Of a DNA stretch of 64,000 nt, positions 3,301 through 54,780 are shown in pieces (position 1 is the stretch's first letter; every line of letters starts with the position of its first letter). The notes under the pieces were generated by a model that saw only the letters and a program-made list of their open reading frames with translations, was not told the DNA's origin and ran no database searches. Both the position numbers and the translations under genes were made by a program. The stretch is from Antechinus flavipes (lineage: Eukaryota): the NCBI RefSeq assembly GCF_016432865.1, contig NC_067403.1, positions 200,074,001 through 200,138,000 on the forward strand, in the 5' to 3' direction.

Positions 3301-3488
3301 ACCAAGCCCAGGCATCACAACTCCACACCCAGCTGCGAACCAACCTTGTGGGTAACGTGTGGCGACAGTACCGGGACACAGGCTTTTTATGGGAACAGTA
3401 CAGTGATCGGGATGGTCACGGCATGGGCTCCCGGCCATTCCAGGGCTGGACCAGTCTTGTACTGCTTGCTATGGCAGAGGACTATTGA
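375..3488 (+). CDS. MOGS: Mannosyl-oligosaccharide glucosidase (ER glucosidase I, GH63), 859 aa, 4 exons
   Basis: Exons 375-780, 873-1102, 1361-1557, 1742-3488; all GT-AG with compatible phases (2580 nt). Arg-rich start MARGERKRR, a TM anchor, and motifs [61 protein letters not shown], end AMAEDY*. Confidence 0.98.
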
Positions 3489-4101: not shown

Positions 4102-5968
<1,867 letters not shown>

Positions 5969-5976
5969 GCTGCTGC

Positions 5977-6087
5977 CTACAGGCCCGGGCAGGAAACTGC
6001 CACCTCCACCGCCGGGCAGCCTGCCACTGCTTTCCGGACCGCAACCACCATAGTCCCGGCCCGGACCATAGCCGCTACCGCCGCCAT
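5977..6087 (-). other. 36-aa AUG uORF in the WBP1 leader, with an internal in-frame splice donor
   Basis: MAAVAAMVRAGTMVVAVRKAVAGCPAVEVAVSCPGL*; three in-frame ATGs, the first in GCGATGG context; stop 8 nt before the WBP1 ATG; GAG|GTGGCA donor after 6004. Confidence 0.6.
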
Positions 6088-6129
6088 CGCTATCCGGACT
6101 CACAGCGACCGAGCCTTGGAGCCTCCCAG

Positions 6130-6336
6130 CCAATCAGCAACTGAGTTGCGTCAGATTGCCACCAATAGGGAGTCGTTTCTTCAGGATCGGCCAATGGGAA
6201 CAGCCTGACAAGGCACTTCCGGAGACCAATGCGCTGCCGCGTCTCCTCCACTCACCCAGACAACAGGGGCCCAGAGACAAAGAGTGAAGAAGCAATCGCC
6301 CAAAGACTGTGATCGGCAGCACCAACCACCAATAAA
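6130..6336 (-). promoter_or_regulatory. WBP1 promoter: CCAAT-box array plus ETS site, lying in the INO80B 3' region
   Basis: CCAAT at 6130, 6162, 6191, 6226 and 6329; CACTTCCGG at ~6214-6222. Confidence 0.7.
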
Positions 6337-6591
6337 AGGCATTAGTCCCCCTTCGTGGGAATCAAGCCCACCAACGAGTGTTCAGAGTCGCTAGAGAGGG
6401 CTGCTTTTTGCGAGAGAAGTCTCAAGGATTGGCTGAGCTTTGCTCAGCAACATGGGCAAGAGGTGGGGAAAAGGGGAACCCGAGGTGAGGTAGCCTTCGG
6501 GGAGGCGGAAAGGCCTCCAGCTCCGCCTCCAGCCGGGAGGGGCCGAGGCCGAGTCGCGGGGGCAAGGGAAGGGGGCGGGGGGCGGGGGTGC

Positions 6592-9002
6592 TCAGGTGGC
6601 CACGATGGGGCTGGGCGGGGCAGCGCCGGCGCCCTCCGGCAGCCCGAGCTGCAGCTGCAGGTTGAGGCGGTAACACTGCAGGCTGCAGAGGGGCTGGCCC
6701 GTGCGCGAGCAGGCGTAGCGCCGCGGGTGGGGACAGCCTGGCACAGAGCAGCGAGGCCGAGGGCCCGGGGGTGGTGGGGGCGGCGAAACGGGGGCCGGCG
6801 TGGGCACACCCACGGGGAAGGACAGGGTGGCGCCGCGCGCTCCGCTGCTATAGCGGACCATGGGCGTGGCGGCGGGTGGCCGGCCCCCTCGGCGCTCGCC
6901 ACGCGCGGCCCCTCGGCCGCCGCGGCTGCTGGGGGCCGCCGTCTTGGTCAGCCTCTCGATGGTCTGGTTTTTGTGCTCCTCCGCCCGGCGGGCCGCCTGC
7001 AAGCGCCGCTTTCGGGCCCGCTCCTCCCGCTTCATCAGCATTTCCTCTGTGAGCTTCGGAGCCCCCGCGGCAGCCGGCAGGGCGAGCATGGGCGACGGCT
7101 GGCTCCGAGCCTTCTGCAGCAGGGCCCTCTGCGGGGACAACGAGGAGGGGCCAGATCGTCAGGGGCCGCCCACTCAGACACTGCCGGCTCCCCGCCCCGG
7201 TCCTCACCTCCGACCCTATCCACCCACCCACCTGGCGAGCTGTGAGCAATCTCTCGTTGATCTCCTTCTTCAGGTCCCCATTGTCATCCAGCTCCCCCTT
7301 CTCCAGTGCATCCAGCCAGCGCTGTTCTTCCTCATCTTCTCGGCCTCCAAGGCCTCCAGCCAATTCCCCGAGAGGGGAGGGAGACAGGTTACTGTCTTCA
7401 TCTGGGGACAAAAGTGCACAACTTGTATCCAGGCAGAAGAACAGCCAAACTGGGGGGGTGGGGGAGAGGCCGTCAGCCAATCCCTGAAGGTGCCTTACCC
7501 AGCCAGGCGCGATACTGCTCAATGGGGACCCCTTCCATTGGCTCCTCTTCATTGTCCACAACCATGAGGGGAGAAGGGGACCGGGGCTCCTCGGGGATCA
7601 CAGTGAAAGTGGGAACACTGGAGAAGAAGAGTGAGAAGCTTGGCCAGCCTGATCCTAGCTCCTTTCCTACATTCCACATGCTGGAAATCAACAGGTCCAG
7701 TCTGTGGGCATTTACTGAGCACCTTCTATGCACCAAGGACTGCACTTATAGTGTTGGGGAATCCAAAGAAAAGCAAAAATAGTGTCTGCTTTGGAGCAGG
7801 AGCTCACATTCTAATAATGGCCACTATCAACCAGTCCAATCTCCTGCCTCCCACCACAGTCCCATAGTCATTTTGGTGCTGTGGTTAGAGCCCCGCGCTA
7901 GGAATCAGGAACACTCCTCGAGTTCAAATACAGCCTCGGACACTTCCTAGCTGCATGACCCCCGAAGAGGCACTTAACCCTGTTTGCCTCTGTTTCCTCA
8001 TTTGCAAAATGAGCTGGAAAAGAAAATGGTCAATCATTTTGCTAAAAACACTCCTGATCTCACCCCAAAGGCTGATCAGACCCTCTTCCCAGTGGAAATA
8101 AGGGACCTTTTTTAACTTTCCCTGATTCCTAGACTTCCAACCCAACTCCCTAGGCAGTATGGCCAGACTCCCCACCAAAAGCCGACCAACTCCAGGTCAG
8201 CACCCATGGGGAGTCCTTGGTTGTCAGCACAGCCCATGAGGTCAGGGGAGCTCGAGTGCTTTCTTGGGAGGGCTTGGCCCTGGCTGGCCCCCCGGAACCA
8301 CAGAACCCCGACCCGGGTCTTCACGCTTACCTCTTGGTGCCCAGGACCTGGCCACCCAGCTTGATCCTGAGCTTCAGCTGGGCAGGAGCTTGGGCAGGGC
8401 CAGAGGCAGAACTGGGCAGGGGGGGGCCGGGCCCTTCCTCCTGGTGCTGCTTTTTCTTGTGTTTCTTCTTGTGCTTCTTATGCTTCTTCTTATGGCCACC
8501 GTGGCCGTGGCCACTCAGTTCCAGCTCTTCTCCTGAGGGTCAGCGCCGTTAGCTGGGGGTCGGGGCAGGGGCAGCACCCGGGGCACACAACTTGGGTAGG
8601 CACCGGGGGCCCTTCCCCGGAGCTGGGGAGAGGGGAGGGGATGGAAGGGGGGCTGTGGCTAGGACGGGTCGTCTCCATGGCAACCAAGGAGGCGCCACTC
8701 GGAGCTGGGGGAAGGGAGAAGGGAGAGTGTCCGTTGCCTTGGAGATCGCGCGCACGTTGGCCCACTGACTAGACGAGACCAGACTGGCCCGGCCCGGCCC
8801 GGCCCGGCCCGTAGAGGCTCCTAGGAGGAAGCGCTCCAGACTCCCACCCGCACCGCCCCTCGCAGGCCTTCAGCTGCGGACGCAGGAACTCTGAGAAGCG
8901 GGCCCCTTCCCACCTAGGTCTGATCCCTCCGGGGCAACACCTACCGGGTTCCGACCCCTCCGCGGCCCCGGAGGCGCCTCCGCGTCTCCACAGCTTGCTC
9001 AT
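6592..9002 (-). CDS. INO80B: INO80 complex subunit B (PAPA-1 and zf-HIT domains), 361 aa, 5 exons
   Basis: Exons 9002-8945, 8532-8331, 7617-7499, 7401-7232, 7128-6592 (1086 nt, GT-AG). MSKLWRRG, Lys/His tract HKKKHKKHKKKHKKK, EEEQRWLDALEKGELDDNGDLK, LTEEMLMKREERARKRR, zinc finger CSVPGCPHPRRYACSRTGQPLCSLQCY. Confidence 0.97.
7865..8050 (+). mobile_element. CORE-SINE (Mar1/MIR-like) in INO80B intron 2
   Basis: tRNA-like head (gtggttagag...gagttcaaat) and core acttcctagctg...tgtttcctcatttgcaaaatgag. Confidence 0.7.
8671..8746. promoter_or_regulatory. Two RFX X-box motifs in INO80B intron 1
   Basis: GTCTCCATGGCAAC (8671-8684) and GTTGCCTTGGAGAT (8733-8746). Confidence 0.55.
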
Positions 9003-10884: not shown

Positions 10885-13800
10885 ATGTTTTCCCGGAATC
10901 ACCGGAGTCGGGTCACGGTAGCCAGGGGTTCTGCCCTGGAGATGGAGTTCAAACGCGGCCGCTTTCGCCTCAGCCTATTCTGCGACACCCCAGAGGTAGG
11001 AGACCCTCCTCACCCCTCCCAGCCTCTCTCGCCGCCTCCTACGGATCGCCCCCCCCTTCGCCTAGAAGGGGTGGGGCAAGGGGTGGACCTTGCAAGTGCC
11101 ACAAGCTGGGTACCAAGGGTGTTGGCTTAGAATAGCACCAACTCGGCTCCGGCCGACTTTTACCCAGCCTCTGTCGTGTCCGATTGGGCTGGCCCAGTCT
11201 GGGAAAATATCCAAGTTGAGCCCCACTTCAGTGACCTCAATTAAGACTTCAACATTTCCCCGAAGCTGGTCCCTCTTGGCCCACTCAATATCCACATGCA
11301 CCTGTAACCCTTCCGTCATGACCAGGACACCTGGGAACTTCCTCCACACACCAAAACCACCCTCTTAGACCCAGTTCGCAGAAATGTCTCGGACTCCAGA
11401 GAGCCCTCTCTACATCCAGACTTGGGTCAAATTGACAAATGGCAGATGCTTAAGATTGAGACGTAAATAGATCCTACCTCTGGGAGTTGGGATACCAATG
11501 TAAAAGAAAATAGGTGATACGACTTGCTTCCCCATCTTTCCCACTCCCCATCTTTCCGACATCTCTGAATTAGTAGGCACCCTCTCTGGATTCATTTCTA
11601 GGAATTAAGACCAGATTTTGATCGGGGCTGTCCCTAAATGTCCAAGCCGTGATCAGTGCCTTTCTCTCAGAGAGTTCTGTAGCGTGGTGAAATAGTACTC
11701 AGTTCAGTTTAGAGGAGCTGCGTTGACCCAGATTTGGCTGCGTGTATGATGTTGGTCAAGTGATTTCCTTTTGGGTCTTTGGGTTTTCCTAACCTATCAT
11801 CAGCATCGTCCTTATACTAAATCTGTGGTTCTTAAACTTTTTTGCGTGTGTTATGGATCCCTTTGGAATTTTGGCGAACTCTACAGATTATCTTTCTGGG
11901 AATGTTTTTAAATGCATAAAATAAAATGCGTAGGATTACAAAGGAAACCAGGAGTTAGTGATAATCAAAATGTAATATTTTTCTCATCAAATATCTAACT
12001 TCCTTTCCCCTCCAGAACTGAAAAGGGTTACATCTAATGGCTCCACCTGCCCACCCCCTCGTTCCTCCCCAGCAGAGATTCCGGTTGGAACTCTGCTCTT
12101 TCCCTCCCCCTGGGAACAAAGGCCCTATTCTTCTCTCTCTCCTCACCTACTCTTCTCCCTCCGCACAGCTGCCTCCGGGAAGGGAAGGGCTGGGAAGGTC
12201 TCGGCTGACTATTCTGAAATGCCACCCCCAGCTTCTGTACACAAAGGGTCACCACCGTTACGCAGGGGACCCTGGAGTCCGAATCCCGAGAACTAGGAAT
12301 TGCTGAGGTGTTTATTGGGGTGGAAGTTTTTAGCCGCGGAAGGAAAAGGCTGTCTGTCCCCTCCTACCAGTTGAGGCCACCCTAAACTTGGATCCAAGAG
12401 GTGGGGCGTGGATGTGAGGGCGGAGCTGAAAAGGCAGACATCTGCCAGGCTAGGCTGCGGAGTTTGGGAACACAGTCCTAGGCTAGAGGACACCGGACTG
12501 GGGGGGAGGGAGGGGCGGTTGGGCCTGGCCGGGGGATAAGAGGCGGGGCCTGGATTCTGTGACCTTGTGGGTCACTGTGTGTTCTGGTGAGAGGGGGGCA
12601 AAAGCTGCAGCTGGCGGGGGACTGGGGCTGGTTTCCTGTCTGGAAGGGAAGGGGCCCAGTGAAGGGAGTATGTGTGAGGGGGGAAAGAGCTGTACGCAGG
12701 CCCTGCCCCCCTAGCCCCCTCTCTTTGCTGGAAAAGAGTGAGGTAACTGGGGAGAGGCTGGGCTGGGTTGGACTGGGCTGGACCGAGGCGGGGCGCAGCA
12801 GAGCATGGGAGGGACATTTGGAGTGGATGAGGCATTCTCTAGGACTCACCCGTTTCCACTTCCCGGGCTCTGTAACTGCCTCACTTTCTCCGCACATCCA
12901 TCCTCCCCACTAAACAGCTGAACAAGAGCCAGGTTCCCAGTTGGAAACCTACAACCTCCCTCATCCGCTCCTTGGGACCCCTTAACAACCATGTGAAACT
13001 TGCCGCCAAATGCTGCTTGACTCCCCCCCTTGCAAAATATCCCCATTCTGCTTCCCCCCCCCATATCACCACATTCCCCTTCACCCCCATCCCTGTACAC
13101 ATTGGCCCTCTGTCCACTGGGCCAGTGATGTGGGCGGGGGCTCGGGAGGGAATGAAAGGCCCTTTCTCTTCCACAGCTGGGAGAACAGCTGCCATCAGAC
13201 CCAAACTGGATGCTGAACTCTGCCTAGGGGCCCCTCTGCCACCAGCCCCCCTCCCCTCTGTCAGTTCTCCAGAACCTCCCTTCTCCCCTCCCACCTTCCT
13301 TTCCCTTCCCCTCCCTCCATCCCTGGCTCCAGCCCGGGGCGGTGGCAGCGGCCGGGGAGAAAGTTTGTCGTGGCAGCCTTAGGGGCCTGACTCCGGGACT
13401 TGGGGGGTTGAAGGGAGGAACCAGCATTGCTTCAGGGCAGAACTGAGGGCCTCAGAGATGCAGGACAGATTGCACATCCTGGAAGACCTGAACATGCTGT
13501 ACATCCGGCAGATGGCGCTCAGCCTGGAGGTAATACCCCCGCCCCCACCCCGCAGGGGTGCGTGCTCACCCTGCATGGCCTGAGCCTCCTAGAACTGCAG
13601 TTTGCTGGGCCGAGGGATGGGAGTGGGCTGGGGAGGGGAAGGCTAGGGAACTCTCTGCAGCGTCGGCCACCTGCGGGTTGCGTGAGGGTGGGTTTCTACC
13701 CCAGCCCCAAACCCCCCTCTCTGGGCCGCTCTCTGCCCTTTCCCCACTCCCACCTCCACACACTCTGCAAACTGGTTGCTGGTATGTAATGTTTCTGGGG

Positions 13801-16800
13801 ACCAGGAGAGGGGCGAGGATAAGAGACGCACTGTGGGGTGGGAAATGGGAAAGTCGCTTCTCTGGGCCTCAGTTTCCTTGTCTGTGACATGAGGAAGGGA
13901 GGGTCTCCGAGGTTGGGGCCAGATGGCCTCTGAAATTGCCTCCAGAACGAGCAACTCTAACGCTGACAGCGAGGAAGCTAGCTGAGACAGGATAGAATAG
14001 AACGGGGTCTCAAGTGTGACCGCCAGCGTTTGTGTGGAGCTTGGGCACAAAGAGAAGCGAGGGAGGGAACAAGCCCGGGACAATCTAGCCTTGGAAGTGC
14101 CCGTTTCCCTTTCCGCAGCGCATATCCGAGCATTCTCACTGGCTGAAATCATATACGTTGTCTCTGCCCACCATCTCTCCCTGGTGGTCCAGCCCTATGG
14201 GACTTAGGGTGGCCTAAGAAACCGATTGTTAAATTACATGGAATAGCTAGCGTCGCCTTTTCCTTACCTTCCTCTCCACCAAGAGTGCGGAGATGGACTC
14301 CTGAAAGGTGCCCAATGTTTGGGCAAAGGGGTGAAATTAGGGGGAAATGACTCCGAAAGTGACTTTCATGCGAATGAGAAATAGGAATAATAGTTATCCA
14401 CAGGCCTGTCACCGAATCTGAGTGCGAACCTGAGTAAAATGAAGTCTTTGGAAAGCAAATTTCTCCTTTGGAAAATGGGGTTACAGTTACCTGTATTATT
14501 CTCCTCACTAGGTTGCTATTTGAAAAGTTTTACAATCTTTTATAATAATGACCTAGTAGTTGTATTATTGTGTATGGAGCATCCAGGGTAATAGATGGGA
14601 GAAGGGGGAGTTTGAGAAACAGAAGTAATAGTGCTAGACTCTGAAGGGGGTAATGAGGTCTGAAATTGCGGATGCCTTTGGGGGCTGCTGGAGACCGGGA
14701 GTCTGGGACACTGCGTTTGAGAACATGGCCTACAAGAGGTAGCCCATTGTCTAAAGGGAGAGCTAAGAGGAGGAGGGGAGCTAGAGATAGATTAAAAAAC
14801 AAGATTCCTGGCTTTTCCTGGATAGCCGGGGCAGGAAGTGAGGAGGGAGAGGATGTTGGCTTGAGACCGTAGTTTATAGACTTTTGAAAGTCCGACTTCA
14901 GAGTCCAAAGGTGGAAAGCAAAGTGTACAGGTTGTGAGATGTTTGTCCCTCTCGTTGCCCTGGGCATGTTCTCTCCGGGCTAACGAGGAGCTTCCAGGGT
15001 GGAAGGTCTCCCCAGCGGGCAGGACCTCGTTTACACCTTCCTCTGCGTCCTGCCTCTTCCACACCAGACCTTGCGTCCAACAGGTAGAACTTGGCCCCTC
15101 CATCCTTGACTCCCTTGGAGAGGAGAGGATGGTAGCGGATTGGCAGCCAGCCCTTGGCGAGGCGCTGTCTGTGGTGGCCGTCCCTCCCACCCCTCGCTTC
15201 TCCACGCGGGTCACGCCGCGGGTCTGCAGCTCCCCGAGCCCGGGTGGAGACGGCGGGTGGAGCTTCGGGGCGTGACCATCCTGGGGGCGGCGCTCGGACT
15301 GCCGGCGGAATGTTGTGGGAGGGGGCTGCCGCGTTTGAGGAGGGGATCCCCGAGACCCCGGGATGGTGGCCCTGCGGCCTGGGAGAGGTGAAAGGCTGGC
15401 CACATGGCCCCGCTACCCTGGTCTCCCCGCGCCTCGGCTGCTCTCGCGTCGATTTGGAGCTGATGTCACCGGAGCTCCGGAGCTCTGGAGGCGTGGGGAG
15501 GACGCGGGAGCGCTCCGGCCGAGCCTTGCTGAGCCGGCCCGGCGCTGGCCCTCTGGCCTGCGGCGCCACTTAGCTAGCTCCGCACTAGCCCTGGCCCGGC
15601 CGGTCCGAGCTCGGGGGCCGGAGCCGGCGGCGGCAGCATGGATGGAGCTGGGGAAGGACGAGTAAGTGATGCCCGAGGGAGAGCCTCGGGGGAGGGAGAG
15701 CCTGAGCCTGGCGGCCCGGTGCTGCTCTCCGGGGTCTTGTGGCTAAGCCAAGGGGCGGCGGAGAGAGGCTCTGGGGGTAGTCCGCGTCGTATGTACCTGT
15801 GCCCTTTGCGCACGCCCACCCATCCCTGCATAGCCAGCCACTGCAGAGCGCTCGGCATGGCCAGCCCAGGGCATGGGCGGGCAGCGAACAGTGACACATG
15901 GGTAAATCCCGGTGCTCTCGCAGGCGGCTGGCTCCCGAGAGCTTTCCTGCAGAAGGAAAACACGAAAGGGACTTTACTTGGAGAGGAAAGAAAAGGGAGA
16001 ACTCCAGCGGAGACAGTGTAGGTGAAGGGGGCTGTGGGGAGTCTCTAGGTAATGGACTCAAGGGAGGAAAAAAATTGGCTTGGCCCAAGTAAAAGAAGCT
16101 AAAGTTGGGAAGATAAGGGGAAGATAAACAGGAGCTTAGAGTATCTAGAAGAGGAGATTGGTTTGAGGGAGGGGTCAGGGACCTCCACCAGGGAAGAACC
16201 CTATTCTTCTAGTAGCTCTCCTCTCTAAGTTTTGGGTGTGGAGAGGAGCATGAAATGGAGCTGGATAATGAGAACAGCGTGAGAGGTGAGGGCTGGGGGA
16301 TGAGCATGTTTGGGAATGTTACTCGGAATTGCTCTGTGACTCAGACCTGAATCCAAGATCTTGGGGACGCTCACTCACGTCAGCTCAAAAAAAAAAAAAA
16401 AAAAAAGTTGATAGTTTTCCATTAGCTACGGCATAAAAGGCATTCAAGGTCCTCACATGCTGCATTTTGTCACTGCTGCCCTATAGAAAAGTCTTGCTTC
16501 AGGCAAACCGGTCTCCTTGCTAGCTCATTTTCATGACGTTCTTTCCTTGGGAAACTGGTCTGTCTACCCTCATGTCAAAATTCTAGTCATTTTTTAAGGC
16601 CCTGCTGAAATATTCGATCCTATATAAAAACTTCCCCAATTAACTCAATTGGTAATAGGCTTTTGATTAACCTCCAAATTCTTACATAAGTTTTGATATT
16701 TGTATAACAGCTCTAGGACATACTTCCTTCTGTGATAGTTGTATATGTGTGTGTGTCTGTGTGTGTGTGTGTGTGTCTCCCCAGTAAGTCTCAGGAGAAC

Positions 16801-19800
16801 AAAAAACCACCCTTTCCCATGTTTTGATAGCACCTATTGCATCTAAGTGCAGTAAGTTGTGCATGATATATGCTTTGCTGGATAGATGAATCATCCTGCT
16901 TATCATCTGGGCCTCAGTATCTATAAAGTAGGTAGATTATTCTCTAAGACCCTTTTCTATTCTAACCTTTTATTTTTCCTTGCTACTCTAACCAAACCTT
17001 TTGCCTTCTCTCTCCTGGACCCTCCTCAAACTTCTTTTACTCTTCCTTTCATCTGTATTACCCCACTTTCTAGCTTAATCAAAACATCTGTGATTTTCCC
17101 ACTTTCAGTTTCTGAATCGAACTTAACTAAGACTCTCCCCCATCTTCTTCTGGAGGGTCTTCTTGTCCTAAAGTTTCTAAATTCAGACTAATCTTTAGGT
17201 CAAAGGGACCAGAGAATCTGTAGTTTCCTCCCACATCCTACAAAAATATGTCAACATTTCACACATCTCCCCTTGTCAGATTTTTAAAGTAGGAGATTAT
17301 TCCCTTCTTCCATATAGTTCCCCTTTGGATCCAATATTACACAACTCTTAAATTTTTATTTTGTGATATAGGATAGTATGTGTTGTTTTGTGGCAATACT
17401 CATGATCTTTTCAGTAGGTTCAGCCCCCCAGCTAGAGTATAAGCAGATGGAACTTGTCACTTCAGTTGTGTCTGAATCTTCATGACCCTATTGGGTTTTG
17501 CTACTTCCTTCTTCAGCTCATTTTACAAATGAGGAAACTGAGGCATGCAGGGTTAAGTGACTTGTTCTGTGGGTCACACTGCTATAGTAAGTATTTGAGG
17601 TCAGGTCTTTCTGACTCAAGACCCAGTTTTCTATCCACTCCACCACTTGACTGTCTGAAGCAAATGAAAGGGGTGAAAGGGACATGTCATTTCTTTGGTG
17701 ACTTCCCTAGTACCTGATTAATTCCGAATCAATGTTTCATTCATTCAACACCATTTGGTTGTGATCAGGTACCTAGTCTATACAATATAATATTAAGACC
17801 TAAAGATTCAAAAATAACTTAAGACACAATATTCTCTTCTCTCCAAAGGGGAAGATAAGGTACAAACCTTACATGTGTACATGCTTAGAATAAAAGGCAG
17901 TATATGATATGTGCAATATATGATATGTGCAGAAAAGGAGTACCCAAAGATCACTTCTGTCTCAAGAATGAGTCAGCAGAGCATGTGGCTTTGGAGTCAG
18001 GCTGTATCATAAAGGTTTAATAGTTCAATAAGCAGAATTGGGAAGGTAGGCTGGAATATGTTGTTAACAGATTGGAGAAGGCTGTGTATGCTATAAGCAA
18101 AGGGGAACTACTGGAGTTTTTTTTGTATTAAAGCTTTTTATTTTCAAAACATATGCACAGATAATTTTCAACAGTCACCCTTGCAAAACCTTGTGTTCTA
18201 AATTTTTTTCCCTTCTTTCCTCTGATCCCCTCCCCTAGACATCAAATAATCCAATATAAGTTAAACATATGCAATTCTTCTAAACATATTATCATAATTA
18301 TGCTGCACAAGAAAAATCTGATAAAAAAAAAAGAAAATCAATGAGAAAGTAAACAAAATGCAAATAAACAACAAAAAAGAGTGAAAATACTATGTTGTGA
18401 TCCACATTCAGTCCCCACAGTCCTCTTTCTGGGTGCAGATGGCTCTCTCTATCACAAGTCCATTGGAACTGACCTGAATCATCTCATTGTTGAAAAGAGC
18501 CATGTCCATCAGAATTGAGCTTTGTATAATCTTGCTGTTGCCTATTCAATGATTGGAGATTTTTATAAAGCAGGGAGAAGCCACTGCTTTAGGGAAGATC
18601 AGAGCAATGGTTTAAGATACTAACTTTGGTTGTGTGTTTAGAATAGGGGGGAGTAGGAAGAAAGAGGAAGAAGGCAGACTAATTTAGAAAGTCGTAATGA
18701 TAGGTCATTATTTATTTAACTCAATTTCTCCCAGGGCCTTCCTTAACTCTAACATTAGGGAGAGGGTTGGGAATCCTGTTTCTCTAGTCTTACTAGTTGT
18801 TCCTCTCCCCTCAGGATACAGAGCTGCAGCGAAAGCTGGATCATGAGATCCGAATGCGAGAAGGAGCCTGTAAGCTGCTGGCTGCCTGCTCCCAAAGGGA
18901 ACAAGCCCTAGAGGCCACCAAGAGCTTGCTGGTTTGCAGCAGCCGCATCCTCAGTTACATGGGGGAACTGCAACGTCGAAAGGAAGCACAGGTGCTGGGG
19001 AGAACAGCAAGGCGGTGAGCAGGGGGAGGAAGAGGAGCAGACAAATTTTTGGAAGGGGGCCCTCCTGTACTAACCAAATACCATCTGGAGTCAGATTTGC
19101 TCACCGGGGAGCCAGAATTCATTTAGTCAATACATATTGTCAGCTGGGTGTCCAGTGATGTTCAGTTGAGAGGATGGAATGGGATAGGCTAGCGTGGGAG
19201 TATTGGGCAGTAAAGTGAATTTGGTGCATGTGGTGACTAGGACCTCTAGAAAAGCTTTGGAGTTTTGTTCTCCAATGCCTGAGCCCCCAGTGTCCAGAAG
19301 CACATCAGGCTCCTGGAACCTGTTCACTCATTGACTGGAACCTTATAAGACAGCATTCTCCCACAAGCTCTTCCAGAGCAGCCCTGAACATAGAACACAG
19401 TTCCATAGCATTAGATGTGTGCTAACCAAGGAGGCTGGTACTATCCCCACCAACATCCCCCCTTTCCCCCTTCCCCCAGACAATTGGGATTAAGTGACTT
19501 GCCCAGGGTCACACAGCTAGGAAGTGTTAAGTGTTGTAGGCCAGATTTGAACTTCAGGGCTGGTGCTCTATCCACTGCACCACCTAGCTGCTCTCTCCAC
19601 CAACTCTTGATGAGAATGTTAAAGACTTCAAGAAGAGAAGTACTTTGAAGCATTTCAAGCAGTGGGAGCTATTGAGAAAACAAAGTCATAGGGGATTTAG
19701 AGGGGAGGGTATCTGTGCTGTCAAAGACGTGAGATCTAGTGTTAGAGAGACATAAAGCTGCTCCAAATTGAAGACTACAGACACGGGACTTGAAAGAGAT

Positions 19801-22800
19801 GGGTTTATGCAATGTACTCTCTATGTGAGAGGTATCATGGCATTGTGGATAAAGGTAAGAGACTTGGAGAGAGACTAGATTCAAATCTTATTTGAAATTC
19901 CTACTAAAATCCCATTTGAGAGTCCAACTAGCCGTAATGACTAGCTCAGTTTCCCTATCCGTAAAATGAAAAGGGAATAGACTATTGCAAATGGCCTCAA
20001 AAGTCCTTGCCAATTTTAAATCTATAATCTTACTTGATAAAGTTTGATGAGCATTGTAGGACTCCAAAGTATTAGAGATAAGTGTTGATGGGGTAAGGGT
20101 GGGAAAAAAGCTTGAGAGTTTAATTCACGCTAGTGGAAAACTGATTAGCCAAAACACATTGAGAAGTTACTGGATATGGAGGATCAAGGAGAAGTTGGCA
20201 TGAGGATCAATGTGGAATTTACTCCTTAAAAGAATCTAGTTCAACTCTCCAATTTAAAAAATGAAGAAACTGAGACAGACTTAGTAAATTTTAGGGCCAG
20301 GATTCCAACTCAAATCCATTGGAAGGTCTCACCACTTTGGACTACATTGGCAGGTCAGCCAAAAGTTTTAGTACTCTTCCCATCAGTCAGCCTACCAGGA
20401 ATTCCTTATCTTCTGAGTTTCTTTTATGTTCTTCTCTCCCAAACCTTCGCCCCTCCCCTGTACATATAAGCTACATATACAAGAAAGTATAAAAGGGTTA
20501 ATGGGATGTAGGTCAGGGAGGGAGAAGATGGGCAATGTTAGTTGATTAATAAGAAAAATAACATTGATTTTGAATTTGAAAACTTCCCACTTGAGACTCA
20601 TGATAATCCTGATGTTATGTAGATATGATGCTTATTATTATCCCCATTGTATAGATGGGGAAACTGAGTCTCAGAGAAGCTGGGTGACTTGCCTCTGGTT
20701 ATGTAGTCAGACAGCAGGATTCAAACTAAGGTTTCTCTTAGTCCTAAATTTAGCACTTTTTTCCTACCATAGAGGAAGGGACTCAATAAAGATTATTATT
20801 CTTACAAGGCATCTCCAGGGAATGTGTATGAGTTTATATGTGAATCTATAACCCAGTGCATCTACGTGGGCAGAATCATATCAAGTGATCACTGGCACGA
20901 ATAATGAAGTTAATGAGATATATTGACCACTGAAATTAAATTCCCAGGGTCATCCAGTCCCGTATGCATTATCCTTTTATTTCCCCTAGTGTCTGTCACA
21001 TCAATCAGGATGGTCCATAATCCCTGTTTTTCTGGCTAGGATTTGGAAGGGGGAAAGCAGGTTCACTACAATAATTTGCTTATTTCTTCCCCTGCACCCA
21101 AGGCCTTCAGACACTGGGCCCCCTGATGAGCGCTCCCCATGTCGAGGCACAATTTGTATCTCTGGTAAGGAATCCCTCGTTCACCTTCACCGACCCTTTA
21201 CCTCAGCCCATTCTGGCATCCCCTTCTATGCCTGCCCCTTCCCACAGGTTCTGTCCCTGGGGCTAAGGAACGCTGTCCAAGGTGAAAGTTTTCTTGGGGC
21301 ACTTCCTAATCCCCCTGCTATCTCACATCCTGCGTCCCTTCTCCTCTAGATATCCGGATCCCCCTCATGTGGAAGGACACAGAGTATTTCAAGAACAAGG
21401 GAGGTGAGTCTTACAGACAACTATCTTTTCCCCGGGGAGTGGGCTGGGTAATGTCCCTAAGGGCCCATCTGCTCTGTTGATGGAGGTGTCTAGCAAGGTC
21501 TGTCAGCCCACCTACCCTTTCTCCCTAACTGATTGCTGGCTTCTCCCTTCAGACTTACATCGATGGGCTGTATTCCTGTTGCTGCAGCTGGGGGGGAACA
21601 TCCAGGACACAGAGATGGTCCTGGTCGACAGGACGCTAACAGACATCTCCTTTCAAAGCAGCGTTCTTTTGTGAGTCCTTAAACTGGTCATCCTTCTCCC
21701 CCCTCCAACCCAGACCTGCTCCTTGGGAGGGGTAGCCAGAGTATACCTCTGAGGGGAGGTAAGCTCCTGACCCTGCAGCGCTTCCCCCTTTCCCCCACAA
21801 GTCTCCCAGGGAATCCCTCCGCTTCCTCCAGAGCCCTTTCCCATATTTTGCAGTAGTGAGGCAGGACCAGATTTTGAGCTGCGCTTGGAGCTGTATGGGG
21901 CCTGTGTAGAAGAGGAGGGGGTCCTGGCGGGGGCTCCCCGGAGACTGGCCACCAAGCTCAGTAATTCTCTGGGCCGATCCTCGGGAAGGCGTGTTCGGGC
22001 TTCACTGGAGAGCGCTGGGGGTTCTGGGAGTAGCGGTGCCGCCAGTCCCATCCTACTCCCCACTCCTGCTGTGGGGTAAGCATAATCTCTGGGCCCTGCG
22101 GGGCTACCCAGTGTCCCTGAGCTATCAGAGAGCTATCAGGGGAGGGACAAAGAGTACTGGCCCGGATGCAGTATGTGGATCGCCTGAGTGATTCACAGCA
22201 AGATCAAAGCAGAGCAAGACTGCAGAAAAGGGGTTCTGGAGTGAGATTTCTAGTGAAAGAAGAGATGGCTCGGTGGTGAGAGCTGTTTCACCACGGGTCA
22301 GTGACCCACCTCCCTTCTGACACTTTGTCCCTCCCACAGGGGTCCCCGGTATCACCTCCTGGCCCAGACCACCCTTACTCTGGCTGCGGTACAAGATGGC
22401 TTCCGAACCCACGACCTCACCCTCACTAGTAATGGTGAGTGAGGGTGGGTAGGGGCAGGGGGAATGGGGAGGAATGCCTCAATCAGGATGGAGAAGAAAG
22501 GGGCCCAGTTAAAATCCCCCCCTCCCCTTCCCCACCATCACTCTGTTCTCTCTAGAGGAGAACCCAGCCTGGTTGCCCCTCTATGGAAGCGTGTGTTGTC
22601 GCTTGGCGGCTCAGCCCTTGTGCATGACTCAGCCTGTCATGAGCGGCCCCTTCAGAGTGCAGGTGAGGGGGGAGAGGGGAAAGAGAAAGGTTTGGGGGGC
22701 AACAGAGAGAGCAGCAGCAGGAAATGTACGGAGGAGACGCATCGTGAGGAATAAACGCTGGAAACAAGATGAAGGCGACAACAGGATTTGTGGGATCAGA

Positions 22801-25800
22801 CGTGGGGGAGCCTCCCCCTTAAATTAGGCATAAATGAGACGATGTTACTGGGGGCACTGAGGAATGTGGGATGGGAAGGAGAGGGAGGAAGGTGGAGGTG
22901 GAAAGTGACTTCTGTCTTTGGCTTGTTGGCTGCAGAGCTGGGGCCAGGTCCATGGCATCCTGAAAGGAACCAACCTTTTCTGTTACCGACATCCTGGGGA
23001 AGCTGGCACTCAGGAAGACCCATTGTTCACCATTGCAATCAACAAGGTGACGATGGCAGCCGGGGTGCCCTGAGGCGTGGGGGGCTCAGAGAGGAGAAAC
23101 CCTGTTAAACCTCGGAACTGGACCCTGGGCAGAGGCGGCTTCCATTCGTGGAAGGCTTAAGGATGAAAAGTGCCGGACATGGGCCCCCTGACCTCAGGGA
23201 GCCCAGCTTGCCTCCACACAGAGCAACTTCTTGGAAATGAGCCATCCCAGGATGCTCCCTGCCTAGATCCTCTGGTCTCACATCCACCTGGGACCTTCAG
23301 AGTGTGATGTGGCTCCTTACTAGGATTCTGAGGCTCGGCTTCATTACGGAAATGACTTCGGGCCTTTCCTCTGTTTACAAATCTCCAACTTCCTTTGTTG
23401 CTTTGTCTCTCCCTATACCCCCCCCCTTTTTTTTTCTTCCCTCCCTTTCTTTCTCTTGCTTTTTCTCTTTCCTCTTTTCTTTTCCCTCCTCTCCCTTCTC
23501 TCTCTTCCTCTCCCTTTTTCTTCCCCCATTTCTTCTTCTCCTCCTTCCCTTTCTCTTCTCTCCTCCCCTTCTTCCTCTTGCCTCTGTCTCTTCTTCCTTC
23601 TTTCCCCTTTTCTTCCATTTCTTGTCCTTCCTCTTTCTCTTTTTCTCTTCCCCATCTACTTCTTTCCCCCTTCTTTCTTCTACTCTTTTCTTCCACTTCT
23701 TTTCCCTTTTCCCCCACTGCTTTCTTTCTCTTGTTTTTTTCTTCTCTCTTCTTCTTCCCTTTTCCTTCTTTCCTCCCTTTCCCTTTCTCTTGATTTTTCT
23801 TCTCCCTCTTCTTTCTCCCTCCATCCTTTTCTCCTCCTCTATCTCCCCCTTCTTCCTGCTTTCCCCTTTTCTTCATTCTCTTGCTTTTTCTCCTCTCATC
23901 TTTTTTCCTCCTTCTGTCTTCCCTTTACCTTTTCCCCCTCCTTCCATCTCTCTTCCTTTCTCTTGACCTTTTTCTCTCCTACTCTTCTTGTTTTCCCCCT
24001 CCTTTCTCACTTTCTCCCTTCCCATTCCTTCCCCCTTTTTCCTTCTTTCCCCTTTCCCTTCCTTTCTCTTGCTCTATTTCTCCTCCCCATTTCTTCACCC
24101 CTTCTCCTTCCTTTTCTCCCTTCCTCTCATTTTATCTTTTCTCTTCCCTTTTCCCTCCTTTCAGCACTCAATCTTCTGTCACTTGGTCCAATCTTACTCT
24201 TCTAGATTTTCTTCCCTTCTTTCACAGGGATTCCTCAACTATTTTAGGTCATGGTACCTTTTGGCTGTCTGGTGACCTCCTTCTCAAACCCCTTTCTCAG
24301 AGTATCACTCTGTTATATTAAAAAAAAAGAAATTAAACATATAGGATAACAAAGAAAACCACTGATATTGAAATCCAGTCACATTTTTCCAAACAAGCTC
24401 TGAGACCTGGTTTTAGGAGGACCTTAGGAGAGACTGCAGTTGGGTGGCTGCCCTGTTTCTCCCTCTGTTTTGACTCCAGCTCCCTCTTTGGCCTCTCATG
24501 CTCTGTGAAATCTGGGCCTCAGATTTCTTAGCTGTAAAATGTGGGGGATGGAAGAGGATTGGATTTGAGACTTAAAGTCCAAATCTCAGTCCAAATTATC
24601 TTATCCTTCCCTTTCTGTCATGCTTCTTGTCAAATATCTCCTTAACTTCTGATCCTGTCTGGCCTTGGGTTCAAAACTTCTGGTCAGAGAGATGTACTAG
24701 TAACTGATTATGTCACCACTTGGCTGGACACTCCATGGGAGAGGGTTCCCCCCAAAAAAGGGAATCGGAGAGACCAGGAGGTGAATCTGGGACATGGGTT
24801 GGGCCTCAACTTTTACGCTTTCCCCAGGAGACTCGGGTCCGGGCTGGAGAGCGGGACCAGAACCTGGGGGGATCCCTCACCCTCAGCATCAGTAACCGGT
24901 ATGGGGGAGATGAAGTGACCCACACATTGCACATGGAAAGCCGGGGAGTCCTACAGCGCTGGATGGAGGCTTTGTGGCAGCTCTTCTTTGACATGAGTAA
25001 ATGGGTATAGGGTGTTTCTGGGGTGGGGTGGGGGCTAAGGCCTTTGGTGCTCCTAGGGGCCTCCATAGATGGGGTTAATGGTCTACAGCCCTCCCATATG
25101 GAGGCGCTTAAGGGTTGGGAACAGGTCGGGGAGGCTGCAGGGCTGCCTGATCAGCTCCTAAGACTGGAGGACAGCCTGACAGGATTTCTGTCTCTAGTTG
25201 ATTTTTTTTTCCTGGGGTAATGGTGGTTAACTGAGTTTCCAGGGAACTGGGCACACAGCGAGGAAGTGTTAAGTGTCTGAGACCACTGACCAGTTGATTT
25301 TGAAGGGTTTGTTGGAGAAGGAAGCCAGAGTGAGATCTAAGTGGCTGACCCACCACGGCCTGCACCCAATTTCTCCCCTTCTTTAGGCCAGTGGAAACAA
25401 TGCTGCGATGAACTCATGAAGATAGAAGTGCCTCCTCCACGCAAACCTCCCCCTGCGCTGGCCAGGCAAGGCTCGCTCTACCATGAGATGGGTAAGAGGG
25501 ACTCCACTTATGGAAACCGGAGGGAGGTGGGTACTCCCAAGACCCAGGGAATGGAGATGGGGGGATCGAAAGGGTCCCCGGCTTGGGCACATCATCTTTG
25601 AGCAGAAGTGATATCCAGTCCGCTTTCCTTCCTCTCTGGTCATTCTCTCCTCATTCATTCATTCACCTCCAGTTCTATCCTATCCTCGAGACCCATTGTC
25701 ACCTATGACCCCTCAGACCACTTAGTCCCCCACCTCTGACTCTCTTCTCAAACCCACTTACCTCTGACCCTGACCCACTCACTCCACTTCTCTTCGCAGA

Positions 25801-26790
25801 CATACTCACCTTTGACCTTCTCAGACCTACTTACATCTCTACCTCTCTCTTCTCAGACCCTACTTATCCTCTCACCTGACCTTCTCAGACCCACTCACCT
25901 CTGACCCTCTTCTCAGACCATTCCCCTCCCCCCTTACCTCTAACCCTCAGACCCACTCATCCCTCCATCTCTGACCCCCTTCTCAGACCCCATCCCGTGA
26001 CCTTTCCCAGGCCCCTGCTATCACACCACCAGGCCGGTTCCCAGACCTCTCACCGTCTCTGCTCTTGGCTCCCCCCTAAAATGGTTTCTTTCTGTAGAGC
26101 TCTCTAGGCCTTTCCCCCCCTAATGTCTCCTTTTCTGTCTCTTCCTCATGCCGTCTGGCCTCCGGGCCACTTTCCTTTCCTGGTTCCTCCTCTCCCCTCC
26201 CCCTTCCCTCAGCCTTGGTCCCAGGGGGCCCAGGCGAGGGGCTACTGCTCCAGGATAATGCTGTATCAGCCGAGATCCGGGCCCTGCTCTCCTCCTATTA
26301 CAGCGACAGGTGACAGCTGGCCTGCTGGCTGGGAGGGGGCCTGGGGGGTTGGGCTGGTGCAGAGCCAGTCTGGGGCTGAAGCTCTGATGTGTACTCCACC
26401 CCCGCATCCCCTCCCGGTGCTGCAGCTATTGAACCCCTCGATGACATCGCCACAGTGACGGACATCCTGGCAAAGCGGGAGGGGCCCCCCCTGGATGTTC
26501 CCCCACCCTGGCTGGCATTATTTACAGAGAAGCTGCCCTCCTCCAAGCTCCCAGCCCGGGCCCCCAGAAGCCCCTCTCCGCCCCGTGCCTGCCCCGGCCC
26601 CCGAGCCACTCCCTGGGGCCGGCCTCGCACCCTCTCCCTGGACGCTGCTGCCCGAGGCCGCCCTCCTCTTCCTCCCCGCTCCAGCTCGAGTTCCAGCTCG
26701 GGCTCTGGAAGCCCCGCACCCCGACAGCGGTCCCCTCCAGCCCGGGGGTTCCGGGCGAAAGCCCGGCCCTGGCTCCAGTCACCTGTGTGA
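10885..26790 (+). CDS. RTKN: Rhotekin (HR1, anillin-homology and PH domains), 572 aa from first exon 1a, 12 exons
   Basis: Exons 10885-10995, 18815-19014, 21103-21164, 21350-21403, 21553-21670, 21854-22075, 22340-22434, 22556-22662, 22936-23046, 24828-24996, 25387-25491, 26426-26790 (1719 nt, GT-AG, phases compatible). MFSRNHRSRVTVARGS, DTELQRKLDHEIRMREGACKLLAAC, C-terminal PDZ ligand QSPV*. Confidence 0.96.
11820..11995. mobile_element. Old DNA-transposon/MITE-like fragment (hAT-like; family not certain)
   Basis: Shares tttaaatgcataaaataaaat and flanking similarity with 28590-28900. Confidence 0.35.
13458..13529 (+). CDS. RTKN: RTKN alternative first coding exon 1b
   Basis: MQDRLHILEDLNMLYIRQMALSLE then GAG|GTAATA; phase 0 to exon 2; matches a recalled short RTKN isoform N-terminus. 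Confidence 0.9.
15638..15661 (+). CDS. RTKN: Candidate RTKN alternative first coding exon 1c (MDGAGEGR)
   Basis: In a CpG island; AGCATGG Kozak; 24 nt then a GTAAGT donor (15662-15667); phase 0 joins DTELQRK. Confidence 0.6.
16746..16776. repeat. (TG)n microsatellite
   Basis: Interrupted TG run in RTKN intron 1. Confidence 0.9.
18115..18545 (-). mobile_element. L1 3'-end fragment
   Basis: T-rich tail and 3' UTR sequence shared with the L1 ends near 48.5, 49.7 and 63.6 kb. Confidence 0.7.
19478..19592 (-). mobile_element. WSINE1-like marsupial SINE
   Basis: Reverse complement of gagcagctaggtggtgcagtggatagagcaccagccctgaag...gtgaccctgggcaagtcacttaatcccaattg. Confidence 0.8.
20630..20770 (-). 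mobile_element. MIR-like SINE fragment
   Basis: ccccattgtatagatggggaaactgagtctcagagaag...gtgacttgcc core. Confidence 0.65.
23390..24165 (+). repeat. ~780-bp homopyrimidine (CT-rich) low-complexity tract in RTKN intron 9
   Basis: Almost only C and T on the plus strand; it produces the spurious F/S/L/P and K/E/R/G ORFs in the ORF track. Confidence 0.95.
25690..26030 (+). repeat. Degenerate minisatellite, unit ~26-30 bp (CTTCTCAGACCCACTCACCTCTGACC), about 10 copies
   Basis: Recurring ttctcagacc and cctctgacc motifs in RTKN intron 11. Confidence 0.8.
26213..26309 (+). CDS. RTKN: Candidate RTKN cassette exon encoding an alternative C-terminus
   Basis: Strong acceptor ccttccctcag, ~100-nt AG-free pyrimidine zone, donor AG|GTGACA. 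Reads ALVPGGPGEGLLLQDNAVSAEIRALLSSYYSD in the phase left by exon 11, then SY* in the last exon. Confidence 0.7.
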
Positions 26791-27150
26791 GGGCTTGTAG
26801 GAGGGGGTGCTGCTGGAAACAGGGCAATGCTGAAAGAGGAATGGCCTTCCGAGGTCACTCAAGGGAGTGTTGTCAGGGGGTGGTCAGTGGTGCCACTGAG
26901 GAGGGCCTGGGGTGGCCAGCTTCACGCCCGGCTCTGTGGGGCCTGGGTGAGGGCAAACCCTCCCGTGAGGTCCCCACCGGGGGCCTTGTCCACGGCTGGC
27001 TGGCGGACCCCAGCTACTTCCTGAGAGAAAACTGGAACCCCCAGCCCAGATGCACTACCCCACCTCGGGCGAGAGGGAGCGAGGCTCTGGAAGGAGGGAG
27101 CTGGGACGCCAAGAGGGTGCCTGTCCCCCTTGCTCCCCCCCAATGCAGTC

Positions 27151-54645: not shown

Positions 54646-54780
54646 NNNNNNNNNNNNNNNNNNNNNNNNNNNNNNNNNNNNNNNNNNNNNNNNNNNNNNN
54701 NNNNNNNNNNNNNNNNNNNNNNNNNNNNNNNNNNNNNNNNNNNNNNNNNNNNNNNNNNNNNNNNNNNNNNNNNNNNNNNN
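54646..54780. other. Assembly gap (135 N)
   Basis: Run of N. Confidence 1.

What the first reader, a model, noticed from the sequence alone, without database searches (positions are those of the whole stretch)
26108..26432. Hidden RTKN cassette exon replaces the PDZ-binding tail with a new 34-aa C-terminus
Seen: a 97-nt exon (26213-26309) behind a ~100-nt AG-exclusion zone with a distant branch-point candidate (CCTAAT ~26119-26124), followed by a 116-nt G-run-rich intron. Inclusion shifts the last exon to SY* (TGA 26430-26432), giving 485 aa ending ALVPGGPGEGLLLQDNAVSAEIRALLSSYYSDSY. The stop is in the last exon, so no NMD is expected. The 121-aa tail with RPRTLSLD and the PDZ ligand QSPV is lost. 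Distant branch points with long pyrimidine tracts are typical of PTBP1-regulated, tissue-specific exons. Inference: a splice switch uncoupling Rho-effector function from PDZ partners. Similar peptides may already exist among predicted isoforms.
Basis: partly seen in the sequence, partly recalled or inferred. Interest (0 to 1): 0.72.

Follow-up and report, generated by a model that had tools for sequence, protein, structure and literature searches.

The report
Known short-tail rhotekin splice isoform exon
The 97-base segment is a real, very old alternative coding exon of the rhotekin gene that swaps the protein's long PDZ-binding tail for a short, almost invariant peptide, but databases already list this isoform for mouse, human and many other vertebrates, and RNA from a close relative of this animal showed no use of it.

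Summary
The sequence facts are correct. 26213-26309 is a 97-nt open segment with an AG acceptor, a GT donor and a 104-nt AG-free pyrimidine tract. It lies in the last intron of RTKN.

It is not chance. The same exon, in the same phase, is present in nine genomic loci from mammals, birds and what look like a reptile and fishes. Annotated isoforms carry it from a basking shark to primates. Its 24-residue core (EGLLLQDNAVSAEIRALLSSYYSD) is nearly invariant while synonymous sites are saturated (dN 0-0.07, dS 0.4-1.4).

It is not hidden. Sources name curated RefSeq isoforms with this tail (mouse isoform f; human isoform d by name only), and over a hundred predicted isoforms of 477-495 aa carry it.

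Assembled RNA contigs show real use. Mouse mRNA contigs join it to the upstream exon but keep the short downstream intron and end ...DR-stop.

In three RNA runs of a close relative of the window's species, the skipping junction had 72-89 reads per run and no junction touched the exon. The tissue is unknown.

PTBP1 control is untested. The long AG-free, CU-rich tract is conserved.

Verdict: real, ordinary, already annotated; function uncharacterised.

The parts
25387..25491 (+). Penultimate canonical RTKN coding exon (...QWKQCCDELMKIEVPPPRKPPPALARQGSLYHEM, phase-1 end)
   Evidence: Sequence. RNA reads end their match at 25387 with the previous exon's sequence as loose end, and the canonical joint leaves at 25491. 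tblastn of a leopard isoform maps here.
25492..26212 (+). Intron upstream of the alternative exon. It contains a 32-nt tandem repeat (25815-25919) and the AG-free pyrimidine tract
   Evidence: It is covered at depth 20-55 in RNA runs, so much unspliced RNA is present.
26108..26212 (+). AG-exclusion zone and polypyrimidine tract (83% C+T) ending in the acceptor cag. Branch-point candidates are CTAAT 26120-26124 and CTCAT 26145-26149
   Evidence: It has the highest pyrimidine content and the highest CU-motif count of the RTKN acceptors compared, though the other acceptor positions were only approximate. An AG-free zone of 79-310 nt is conserved in all orthologous loci.
26213..26309 (+). Alternative coding exon (97 nt, phase 1) encoding (A)LVPGGPGEGLLLQDNAVSAEIRALLSSYYSD(S/R)
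   Evidence: Orthologous exons of 97-109 nt, always 1 mod 3, occur in nine loci. dN/dS is about 0-0.05. It is present in annotated RTKN isoforms from shark to primates.
26310..26425 (+). Short G-run-rich intron (116 nt). Its donor GTGACA overlaps the in-frame TGA at 26311-26313 that ends the read-through form (...SDR-stop)
   Evidence: CAG|GTGA is invariant in all nine loci. Mouse mRNA contigs retain the orthologous intron.
26426..26790 (+). Coding part of the last exon. Skipping gives a 121-aa tail (AIEPLDD...RPRTLSLD...QSPV, stop 26788-26790). After cassette inclusion the frame ends at TGA 26430-26432 (...SY-stop)
   Evidence: The canonical joint 25491>26426 has 76/89/72 reads. The last exon begins (C/T)TATTGA in the eight non-mouse genomes read and CCATTGA in mouse, so a TGA sits there in every genome read.

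Best explanation
26213-26309 is this mammal's copy of an ancient alternative coding exon in the last intron of rhotekin (RTKN). When its 3' splice site is used, translation runs from ...SLYHEM into a 32-residue peptide whose core, EGLLLQDNAVSAEIRALLSSYYSD, is almost invariant across jawed vertebrates. It then stops at once. If the weak donor is not used, it stops at the TGA that overlaps that donor (...DR-stop), which is the form annotated in mammals. If the short downstream intron is removed, it stops two codons into the last exon (...DSY-stop), which is the form in birds, reptiles, frogs, fishes and shark. Both routes give a protein of about 485-490 aa. By homology it keeps the Rho-binding and anillin/PH parts; only anillin and weak PH matches were tested here. 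It loses the roughly 120-aa proline-rich tail and the C-terminal PDZ ligand, and it gains a conserved, probably helical, short tail. Shown: the anatomy, conservation at protein level, existing annotation, and real mRNAs in chicken-like and mouse-like samples. Inferred: that the exon is used in this species, that the switch is tissue- or stage-regulated through the long CU-rich, distant-branch-point acceptor, and that the new tail has a binding function of its own.
For: Anatomy. Gene identity: an Anillin domain in an upstream exon and exon-by-exon tblastn of a 490-aa leopard isoform. Conservation: 16 word-search hits share the peptide. Nine genomic loci keep the acceptor, phase and donor CAG|GTGA. 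dN is 0-0.07 against dS 0.4-1.4 over the 24-codon core. The profile search of 1.84 billion representatives found 27 hits at E<1e-10; all that were read are rhotekin pieces, except one repetitive 2,031-aa protein that was not read. Annotation: 45 proteins of 270-670 aa include rhotekin isoform X6 [Gallus gallus], isoform X2 [Cetorhinus maximus], isoform f [Mus musculus] and X5 [Pan paniscus]. That Pan cluster has 134 members, and the listed names include isoform d [Homo sapiens], rhino, leopard, macaque, manatee, otter, bat and whale entries. Transcripts: 13 Logan contigs of 1.6-2.3 kb carry the full spliced 482-aa chicken ORF; in the six that were read, the exon sits exactly between ...CACGAGATGG and CTATTGACCC. 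Three mouse-like mRNA contigs join the exon to the upstream exon and retain the short intron. A divergent vertebrate mRNA contig ends ...TTYYDS-stop. Loss of PDZ and SH3 partners follows from the domain map in the rhotekin review PMC6073136.
Against: In three stranded RNA-seq runs of organism A (same species label as most holders; its reads are mostly 95-99% identical to the window) there were 237 reads across the skipping junction. No junction into or out of 26213-26309 reached the listing threshold of 3 reads. Depth over the exon (24/22/20, then 7/21/5) was no higher than over the intron before it. Use in this lineage is therefore below roughly 3% in those samples, whose tissue is unknown. 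No short isoform with this species' own acceptor sequence (HEM-ALVPGG...) turned up among database proteins. The structure model of the mouse short isoform was poor (pLDDT 32-44 on the tail), so the helix is only a propensity.
Confidence: 0.8

Rival explanations
1. The exon is an evolutionary relic in this species. It is conserved and used in other vertebrates, but here it is effectively silent, and only the skipped, PDZ-binding form is made.
For: No junction reads into or out of the exon against 237 skipping reads in three RNA runs of a close relative. The acceptor lies 9-12 nt further downstream than in other mammals, and the N-terminal part of the peptide differs (ALVPGG against VLSEPVAPGG).
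Against: The open frame, both splice sites, the invariant core peptide and the termination codons are all intact. dS between this copy and other mammals is about 1.2 with dN 0.04, which is not expected for a disused exon. Only three runs of unknown tissue were read.
Confidence: 0.15
2. The conservation reflects a nucleic-acid element, such as a splicing regulator of the last intron or a retention or detention signal, and not a translated peptide.
For: The last intron is strongly retained in the RNA runs (depth 20-55 against 60-170 on exons). Mouse-like ORFs ending ...HEMGK show the same retention.
Against: Substitutions fall almost only on synonymous sites: 17 of 24 codons vary in sequence but only 3 vary in amino acid. 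Exon length is always 1 mod 3, and the stop follows immediately in every lineage. Full-length mRNAs with the exon in frame exist.
Confidence: 0.03
3. The exon is a poison exon. Its inclusion serves to down-regulate RTKN through a premature stop and NMD.
For: Inclusion shifts the frame (97 nt, 1 mod 3) and brings an early stop.
Against: Both possible stops lie in the terminal exon of their transcript, with no exon junction downstream. The encoded peptide is under strong protein-level constraint, which a pure poison exon does not need.
Confidence: 0.02

Closest known systems
Rhotekin isoform f [Mus musculus] (NP_001397243.1, 490 aa; also isoforms d, g and h with the same tail). By name only: rhotekin isoform d [Homo sapiens] and predicted X isoforms of many mammals
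   Same: Same gene, same position in the last intron, same phase and same core peptide (mouse: EGLLLQNNAISAEIRALLSSYYSD). The PDZ-binding tail is lost in the same way.
   Different: The mammalian models start the exon 9-12 nt further upstream (HEM-VLSEPVA...). They do not use the donor, so they end ...DR-stop with the short intron kept in the mRNA. The window has no AG at the upstream position.
Rhotekin isoform X6 [Gallus gallus] (482 aa) and like isoforms of birds, turtles, snakes, frogs, teleosts and the basking shark
   Same: True cassette use. The exon is spliced on both sides, the frame ends ...SSYY(S/N)DSY-stop two codons into the last exon, and the length is 477-495 aa.
   Different: Other classes of vertebrates. 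The exon is 97-109 nt. In birds the upstream intron is only about 110-170 nt.
[quoted passage not shown]
   Same: The exons up to ...SLYHEM are shared, so by homology the Rho-binding and PH parts are the same. The window encodes this form too, and it is the only one seen in the reads.
   Different: The canonical form ends ...QSPV. According to the review PMC6073136, PDZ-domain partners such as PIST and LIN-7 bind through the C-terminal motif, and vinexin is a further partner. The short form lacks all of this and carries the conserved 24-residue peptide instead.
Exons with distant branch points and long AG-exclusion zones, a class rich in PTB-repressed alternative exons (recalled from the literature, not read here)
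   Same: 104-nt AG-free zone, 83% pyrimidines, CU-rich motifs, and candidate branch points at -64 and -89. The feature is conserved in all orthologues.
   Different: No binding or knock-down data exist for this exon. The tract is richer in C (48%) than in U (35%), so C-rich-tract binders are as plausible as PTBP1.

Membership tests
RTKN short C-terminal isoform (mouse isoform f / chicken isoform X6 type) | The exon lies in the last RTKN intron, between the exon ending ...SLYHEM and the last exon beginning (A/V)I(E/D)... | tested here: met
RTKN short C-terminal isoform (mouse isoform f / chicken isoform X6 type) | Phase-1 acceptor and the conserved peptide EGLLLQDN..SAEIRALLSSYY(S/N)D in frame | tested here: met
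   The window peptide is identical to the vertebrate consensus over the core. Acceptor and phase are conserved.
RTKN short C-terminal isoform (mouse isoform f / chicken isoform X6 type) | Translation ends directly after the exon (DR-stop at the donor, or DSY-stop in the last exon) | tested here: met
   TGA at 26311-26313 and TGA at 26430-26432. The same holds in every orthologue read, with a slightly different last codon in mouse.
RTKN short C-terminal isoform (mouse isoform f / chicken isoform X6 type) | The exon is actually spliced to the upstream exon in mRNA of this species | tested here: inconclusive
   No such junction appeared in three RNA runs of a close relative, against 72-89 skipping reads each. 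The tissue is unknown and only about 6% of each run was read. The junction is present in chicken-like and mouse-like mRNA contigs.
PTBP1-repressed, distant-branch-point alternative exon | Long AG-exclusion zone with a distant branch point and a CU-rich tract | tested here: met
   104 nt AG-free, branch candidates at -64 and -89, and 11 CU motifs in 150 nt against 0-6 at approximately placed other RTKN acceptors. Conserved.
PTBP1-repressed, distant-branch-point alternative exon | PTBP1 binding, and a change of inclusion on PTBP1/2 depletion | not testable with these tools
   No paper in the library links Rtkn splicing to Ptbp1.
Poison (NMD-triggering) cassette exon | Premature stop more than about 50 nt upstream of a later exon junction | tested here: not met
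   Both stops lie in the terminal exon of their transcript.

The most novel reading that the evidence does not exclude
The short isoform may be a developmentally timed, CU-tract-controlled switch. It could correspond to the roughly 50 kDa rhotekin band seen only from E18.5 to P11 in rat brain (PMC6073136). Its invariant 24-residue tail would then be a new docking helix that redirects the Rho effector away from PDZ and SH3 scaffolds to an unknown partner. No paper found here has characterised this tail.
Probability: 0.25. Interest if true: 0.5.

Novelty: already known. Interest (0 to 1): 0.22.

Why it matters
Rhotekin is usually treated as one protein that couples active Rho to PDZ and SH3 scaffolds such as PIST, LIN-7 and vinexin. 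The open literature found here describes only N-terminal isoforms or unassigned Western bands. A short isoform that lacks this whole coupling region has been kept from shark to human, and its 24-residue tail is under extreme purifying selection. That implies a second, unstudied mode of action for the protein. For this scan the finding is ordinary: the exon is correctly seen, but gene annotation already holds it. The useful residue is a clean, testable question about what the invariant tail binds and when the exon is used.

Tried and rejected
- Pfam found nothing on the exon ORF, the tail or neighbouring exons except Anillin and weak PH in upstream exons.
- The exon profile against the PDB gave only chance matches (E about 0.8).
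- AlphaFold2 on the mouse short isoform with 25 orthologues gave mean pLDDT 46. The tail was helical but at pLDDT 32-44, so I did not use the model and ran no fold search.
- Paper searches for rhotekin/Rtkn with splice variant, alternative splicing, Ptbp1 or isoform found no study of this exon. The two Rtkn splicing papers opened do not address it: one concerns an alternative first exon, and the other names no exon in the text read. An intron-retention paper refers to a different RTKN intron.
- Earlier notes of this scan hold nothing on RTKN.
- The idea that RTKN2 carries a like exon got no support: no hit in the representative search was identified as RTKN2.
- The Scleropages model P0033, which reads the exon in frame into the tail, is probably a mis-prediction and I did not pursue it.
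- Reads: the listing threshold is 3 reads, reads that look human are dropped silently, and the runs are from a relative of the assembled animal. The negative is therefore weak.
- Joined step left out: I sent no spliced model of the window's protein to any search tool. Searches used single exons by reference or database proteins. The only joining was a local frame check.
- L002 and L003 are mammalian contigs of unknown species whose peptide differs from the Pan sequence. The human isoform appears by name only and I neither read nor compared it.

Full report
**The observation**

The window carries a mammalian rhotekin (RTKN) gene on the + strand, from about 10885 to about 27200. An upstream exon matches the Anillin domain. 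A 490-aa leopard rhotekin isoform maps exon by exon onto 10885-26310.

- The penultimate canonical exon ends at 25491 (...SLYHEM, phase 1, donor GTAAGA).
- A 97-nt open segment runs from 26213 to 26309, bounded by ccctcag| and CAG|GTGACA.
- A 116-nt intron with five G-runs follows.
- The last exon starts at 26426.

No AG occurs between 26108 and 26210. This 104-nt zone is 83% pyrimidine and holds only four A's, so any branch point lies at least 43 nt upstream.

Inclusion gives ALVPGGPGEGLLLQDNAVSAEIRALLSSYYSDSY and stops at TGA 26430-26432. Skipping gives the 121-aa tail ending QSPV.

The donor itself overlaps an in-frame TGA (26311-26313), so a transcript that enters the exon but does not use the donor ends ...SSYYSDR-stop.

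I did not build the joined protein, so the figure of 485 aa is only approximately confirmed.

**Is it more than chance?**

Yes, by a wide margin.

A word search with the 71-aa stop-to-stop frame (window:26098-26310) returned 16 proteins that all share EGLLLQDN..SAEIRALLSSYY(S/N)DR. Among them are 'Rhotekin [Anas platyrhynchos]' and 'rhotekin-like [Numida meleagris]'.

I fetched nine genomic loci: two unidentified mammals, three bird loci, one contig that looks like a bird or reptile, and three that look like fish. In all of them:
- the exon has an in-phase AG acceptor;
- its length is 97-109 nt, always 1 mod 3;
- the donor CAG|GTGA is invariant.

The last exon begins (C/T)TATTGA in all eight non-mouse genomes read. 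Cassette inclusion there always ends D-S-Y-stop.

Over the 24-codon core, 17 codons vary in sequence but only 3 vary in amino acid. Pairwise dN is 0-0.07 against dS 0.4-1.4. That is the signature of a translated peptide under strong constraint, not of a nucleic-acid element.

A profile of the exon searched against 1.84 billion representative proteins found 27 hits at E<1e-10. All the hits I read are pieces of rhotekin; one repetitive 2,031-aa hit was not read. No other family and no RTKN2 was identified.

**Is it hidden?**

No. I searched with the last 40 residues of a database protein, chicken 'rhotekin isoform X6' (482 aa). This returned 45 proteins:
- Isoforms of 477-495 aa ending ...SSYY(S/N)DSY in birds, a tortoise, a snake, frogs, many teleosts and the basking shark.
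- Mammalian isoforms of 490 aa ending ...SSYYSDR, including 'rhotekin isoform f [Mus musculus]' and 'isoform X5 [Pan paniscus]'.

The Pan cluster has 134 members. The names listed include rhino, leopard, macaque, manatee, otter, marmot, bat, mole-rat and whale predictions, and 'rhotekin isoform d [Homo sapiens]'. I neither read nor compared the human protein.

Mouse also has isoforms d, g and h with the same tail on other N-termini. An orang-utan entry, 'RTKN isoform 13, partial', carries it too.

**Is it really spliced anywhere?**

Yes.

Thirteen Logan contigs of 1.6-2.3 kb, from at least two series of run accessions, carry the complete 482-aa chicken ORF as one open frame. In the six I read, the 106-nt exon sits exactly between ...CACGAGATGG and CTATTGACCC. 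These are the genomic exon borders of the bird locus L005. That is a true cassette.

Three mouse-like mRNA contigs join ...CACGAGATGG to TCTTATCAGAACC... and then run on through GACAG|GTGACAG... and the whole short intron into the last exon. The coding sequence ends ...SDR-stop.

A divergent vertebrate mRNA contig (L019) ends ...AEIRALLTTYYDS-stop.

There are thus two routes to nearly the same protein: cassette use in non-mammals, and in mammals an alternative 3' splice site that lengthens the terminal exon. The donor lacks the consensus G at +5 in every lineage (GTGACA, GTGATG, GTGACG, GTGACC, GTGAAG). This fits its optional use.

**Is it used in this species?**

This is not shown. Public runs holding the stretch fall under two organism labels. 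Organism B holds all sampled words and is likely the source of the assembly or very close to it. Organism A holds 75%.

I laid three stranded RNA-seq runs of organism A (raw reads, about 6% of each read) and one metatranscriptome on 25360-26859.
- The skipping junction 25491>26426 had 76, 89 and 72 reads.
- No junction into or out of 26213-26309 reached the listing threshold of three reads.
- Depth over the exon (24/22/20, then 7/21/5) was not above the preceding intron (about 30-50). That intron is strongly retained relative to the exons (60-170).

Inclusion is therefore below roughly 3% in these samples.

The caveats are these: the tissue is unknown, the runs are from a relative, reads that resemble human DNA are dropped silently, and only one call was allowed. 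The frame, both splice sites and both stops are intact here, and dS to other mammals is about 1.2 at dN 0.04. I therefore still judge use in some tissue or stage more likely than not.

**How it most likely works**

Shown: a choice at the last intron decides the C-terminus.

The long form ends in the proline-rich regions and the PDZ-binding motif. The rhotekin review ties that motif to PDZ partners such as PIST and LIN-7, and it lists vinexin as a further partner (PMC6073136). The short form stops right after the exon and lacks all of this.

Neither stop has an exon junction behind it, so NMD is not expected.

Inferred: the short form still binds Rho but is uncoupled from those scaffolds, and the invariant tail has a binding role of its own.

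The same review reports four rhotekin bands in rat brain that were 'considered splicing isoforms', including a 50 kDa band limited to E18.5-P11. A protein of about 490 aa fits that size, but this link is my speculation.

**Regulation**

The long AG-free zone (79-310 nt) and the pyrimidine-rich tract (68-83%) before the exon are conserved in all nine loci. In the window this acceptor has the highest CU-motif count of the RTKN acceptors compared, although the other acceptor positions were only approximate.

It does not single out PTBP1. The tract is richer in C than in U, and no paper in the library links Rtkn splicing to Ptbp1.

**What led nowhere**

- Pfam and the PDB gave nothing on the peptide.
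- The AlphaFold2 model of the mouse short isoform was poor. The tail was helical but of low confidence.
- The literature holds no study of this exon.
- Earlier notes of the scan hold nothing on RTKN.

**Limits kept**

- I sent no spliced model of the window's protein to any search. Searches used single exons by reference or database proteins. The only joining was a local frame check.
- The N-run at 54646-54780 was left alone.
- L002 and L003 are mammalian contigs whose exon peptide differs from the Pan sequence.

**Verdict**

However, it is already annotated, including under curated RefSeq isoform names. In mammals the annotated product ends ...DR rather than ...DSY. Its use in this lineage was not seen, and the PTBP1 idea remains untested.

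Noticed in passing
window 25492-26425: The last canonical RTKN intron is heavily retained in the RNA runs of the related organism (depth 20-55 against 60-170 on the flanking exons). Mouse-like database ORFs ending ...SLYHEMGK show the same retention. Retention would end the protein 35 codons into the intron, at the TGA at 25599-25601.
   Followed up: partly
window 25815-25919: There is a 32-nt tandem repeat of 3.4 copies inside the intron. The related organism differs from the window here by repeat-unit insertions and deletions, seen as 'joints' 25938>25971 and 25962>25900 in both reads and contig.
   Followed up: partly
L001 (Numida meleagris genome) about 4500-6800: N-terminal rhotekin exons (...DTDIQKKIDHEIRMREGACKLL...) lie downstream of the C-terminal 'rhotekin-like' fragment on the same strand. 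This is either a tandem duplicate or an assembly error.
   Followed up: no
L019:212-520: An mRNA contig of an unidentified vertebrate carries a divergent rhotekin-like transcript with the exon spliced in (EGLVIQNNTVSAEIRALLTTYYDS-stop). This may be a paralogue or a basal lineage.
   Followed up: partly
P0033 (Scleropages formosus model): This gene model reads the exon in frame into the long tail (...SSYYSDSCDDSGTATDVL...). It is probably a mis-prediction that uses another acceptor.
   Followed up: no
window 1548-3485 (+): A long open frame encodes what I recognise from memory as the C-terminal part of mannosyl-oligosaccharide glucosidase (MOGS); no tool confirmed this. In another mammal's contig (L002), WDR54 domains follow RTKN on the opposite strand.
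   Followed up: no
window 25406, 25448, 25484, 26460: There are fixed single-base differences between the window and all RNA reads of organism A inside RTKN coding exons. The reads are mostly 95-99% identical overall. The RNA runs therefore come from a relative or a divergent population, not from the assembled individual.
   Followed up: no
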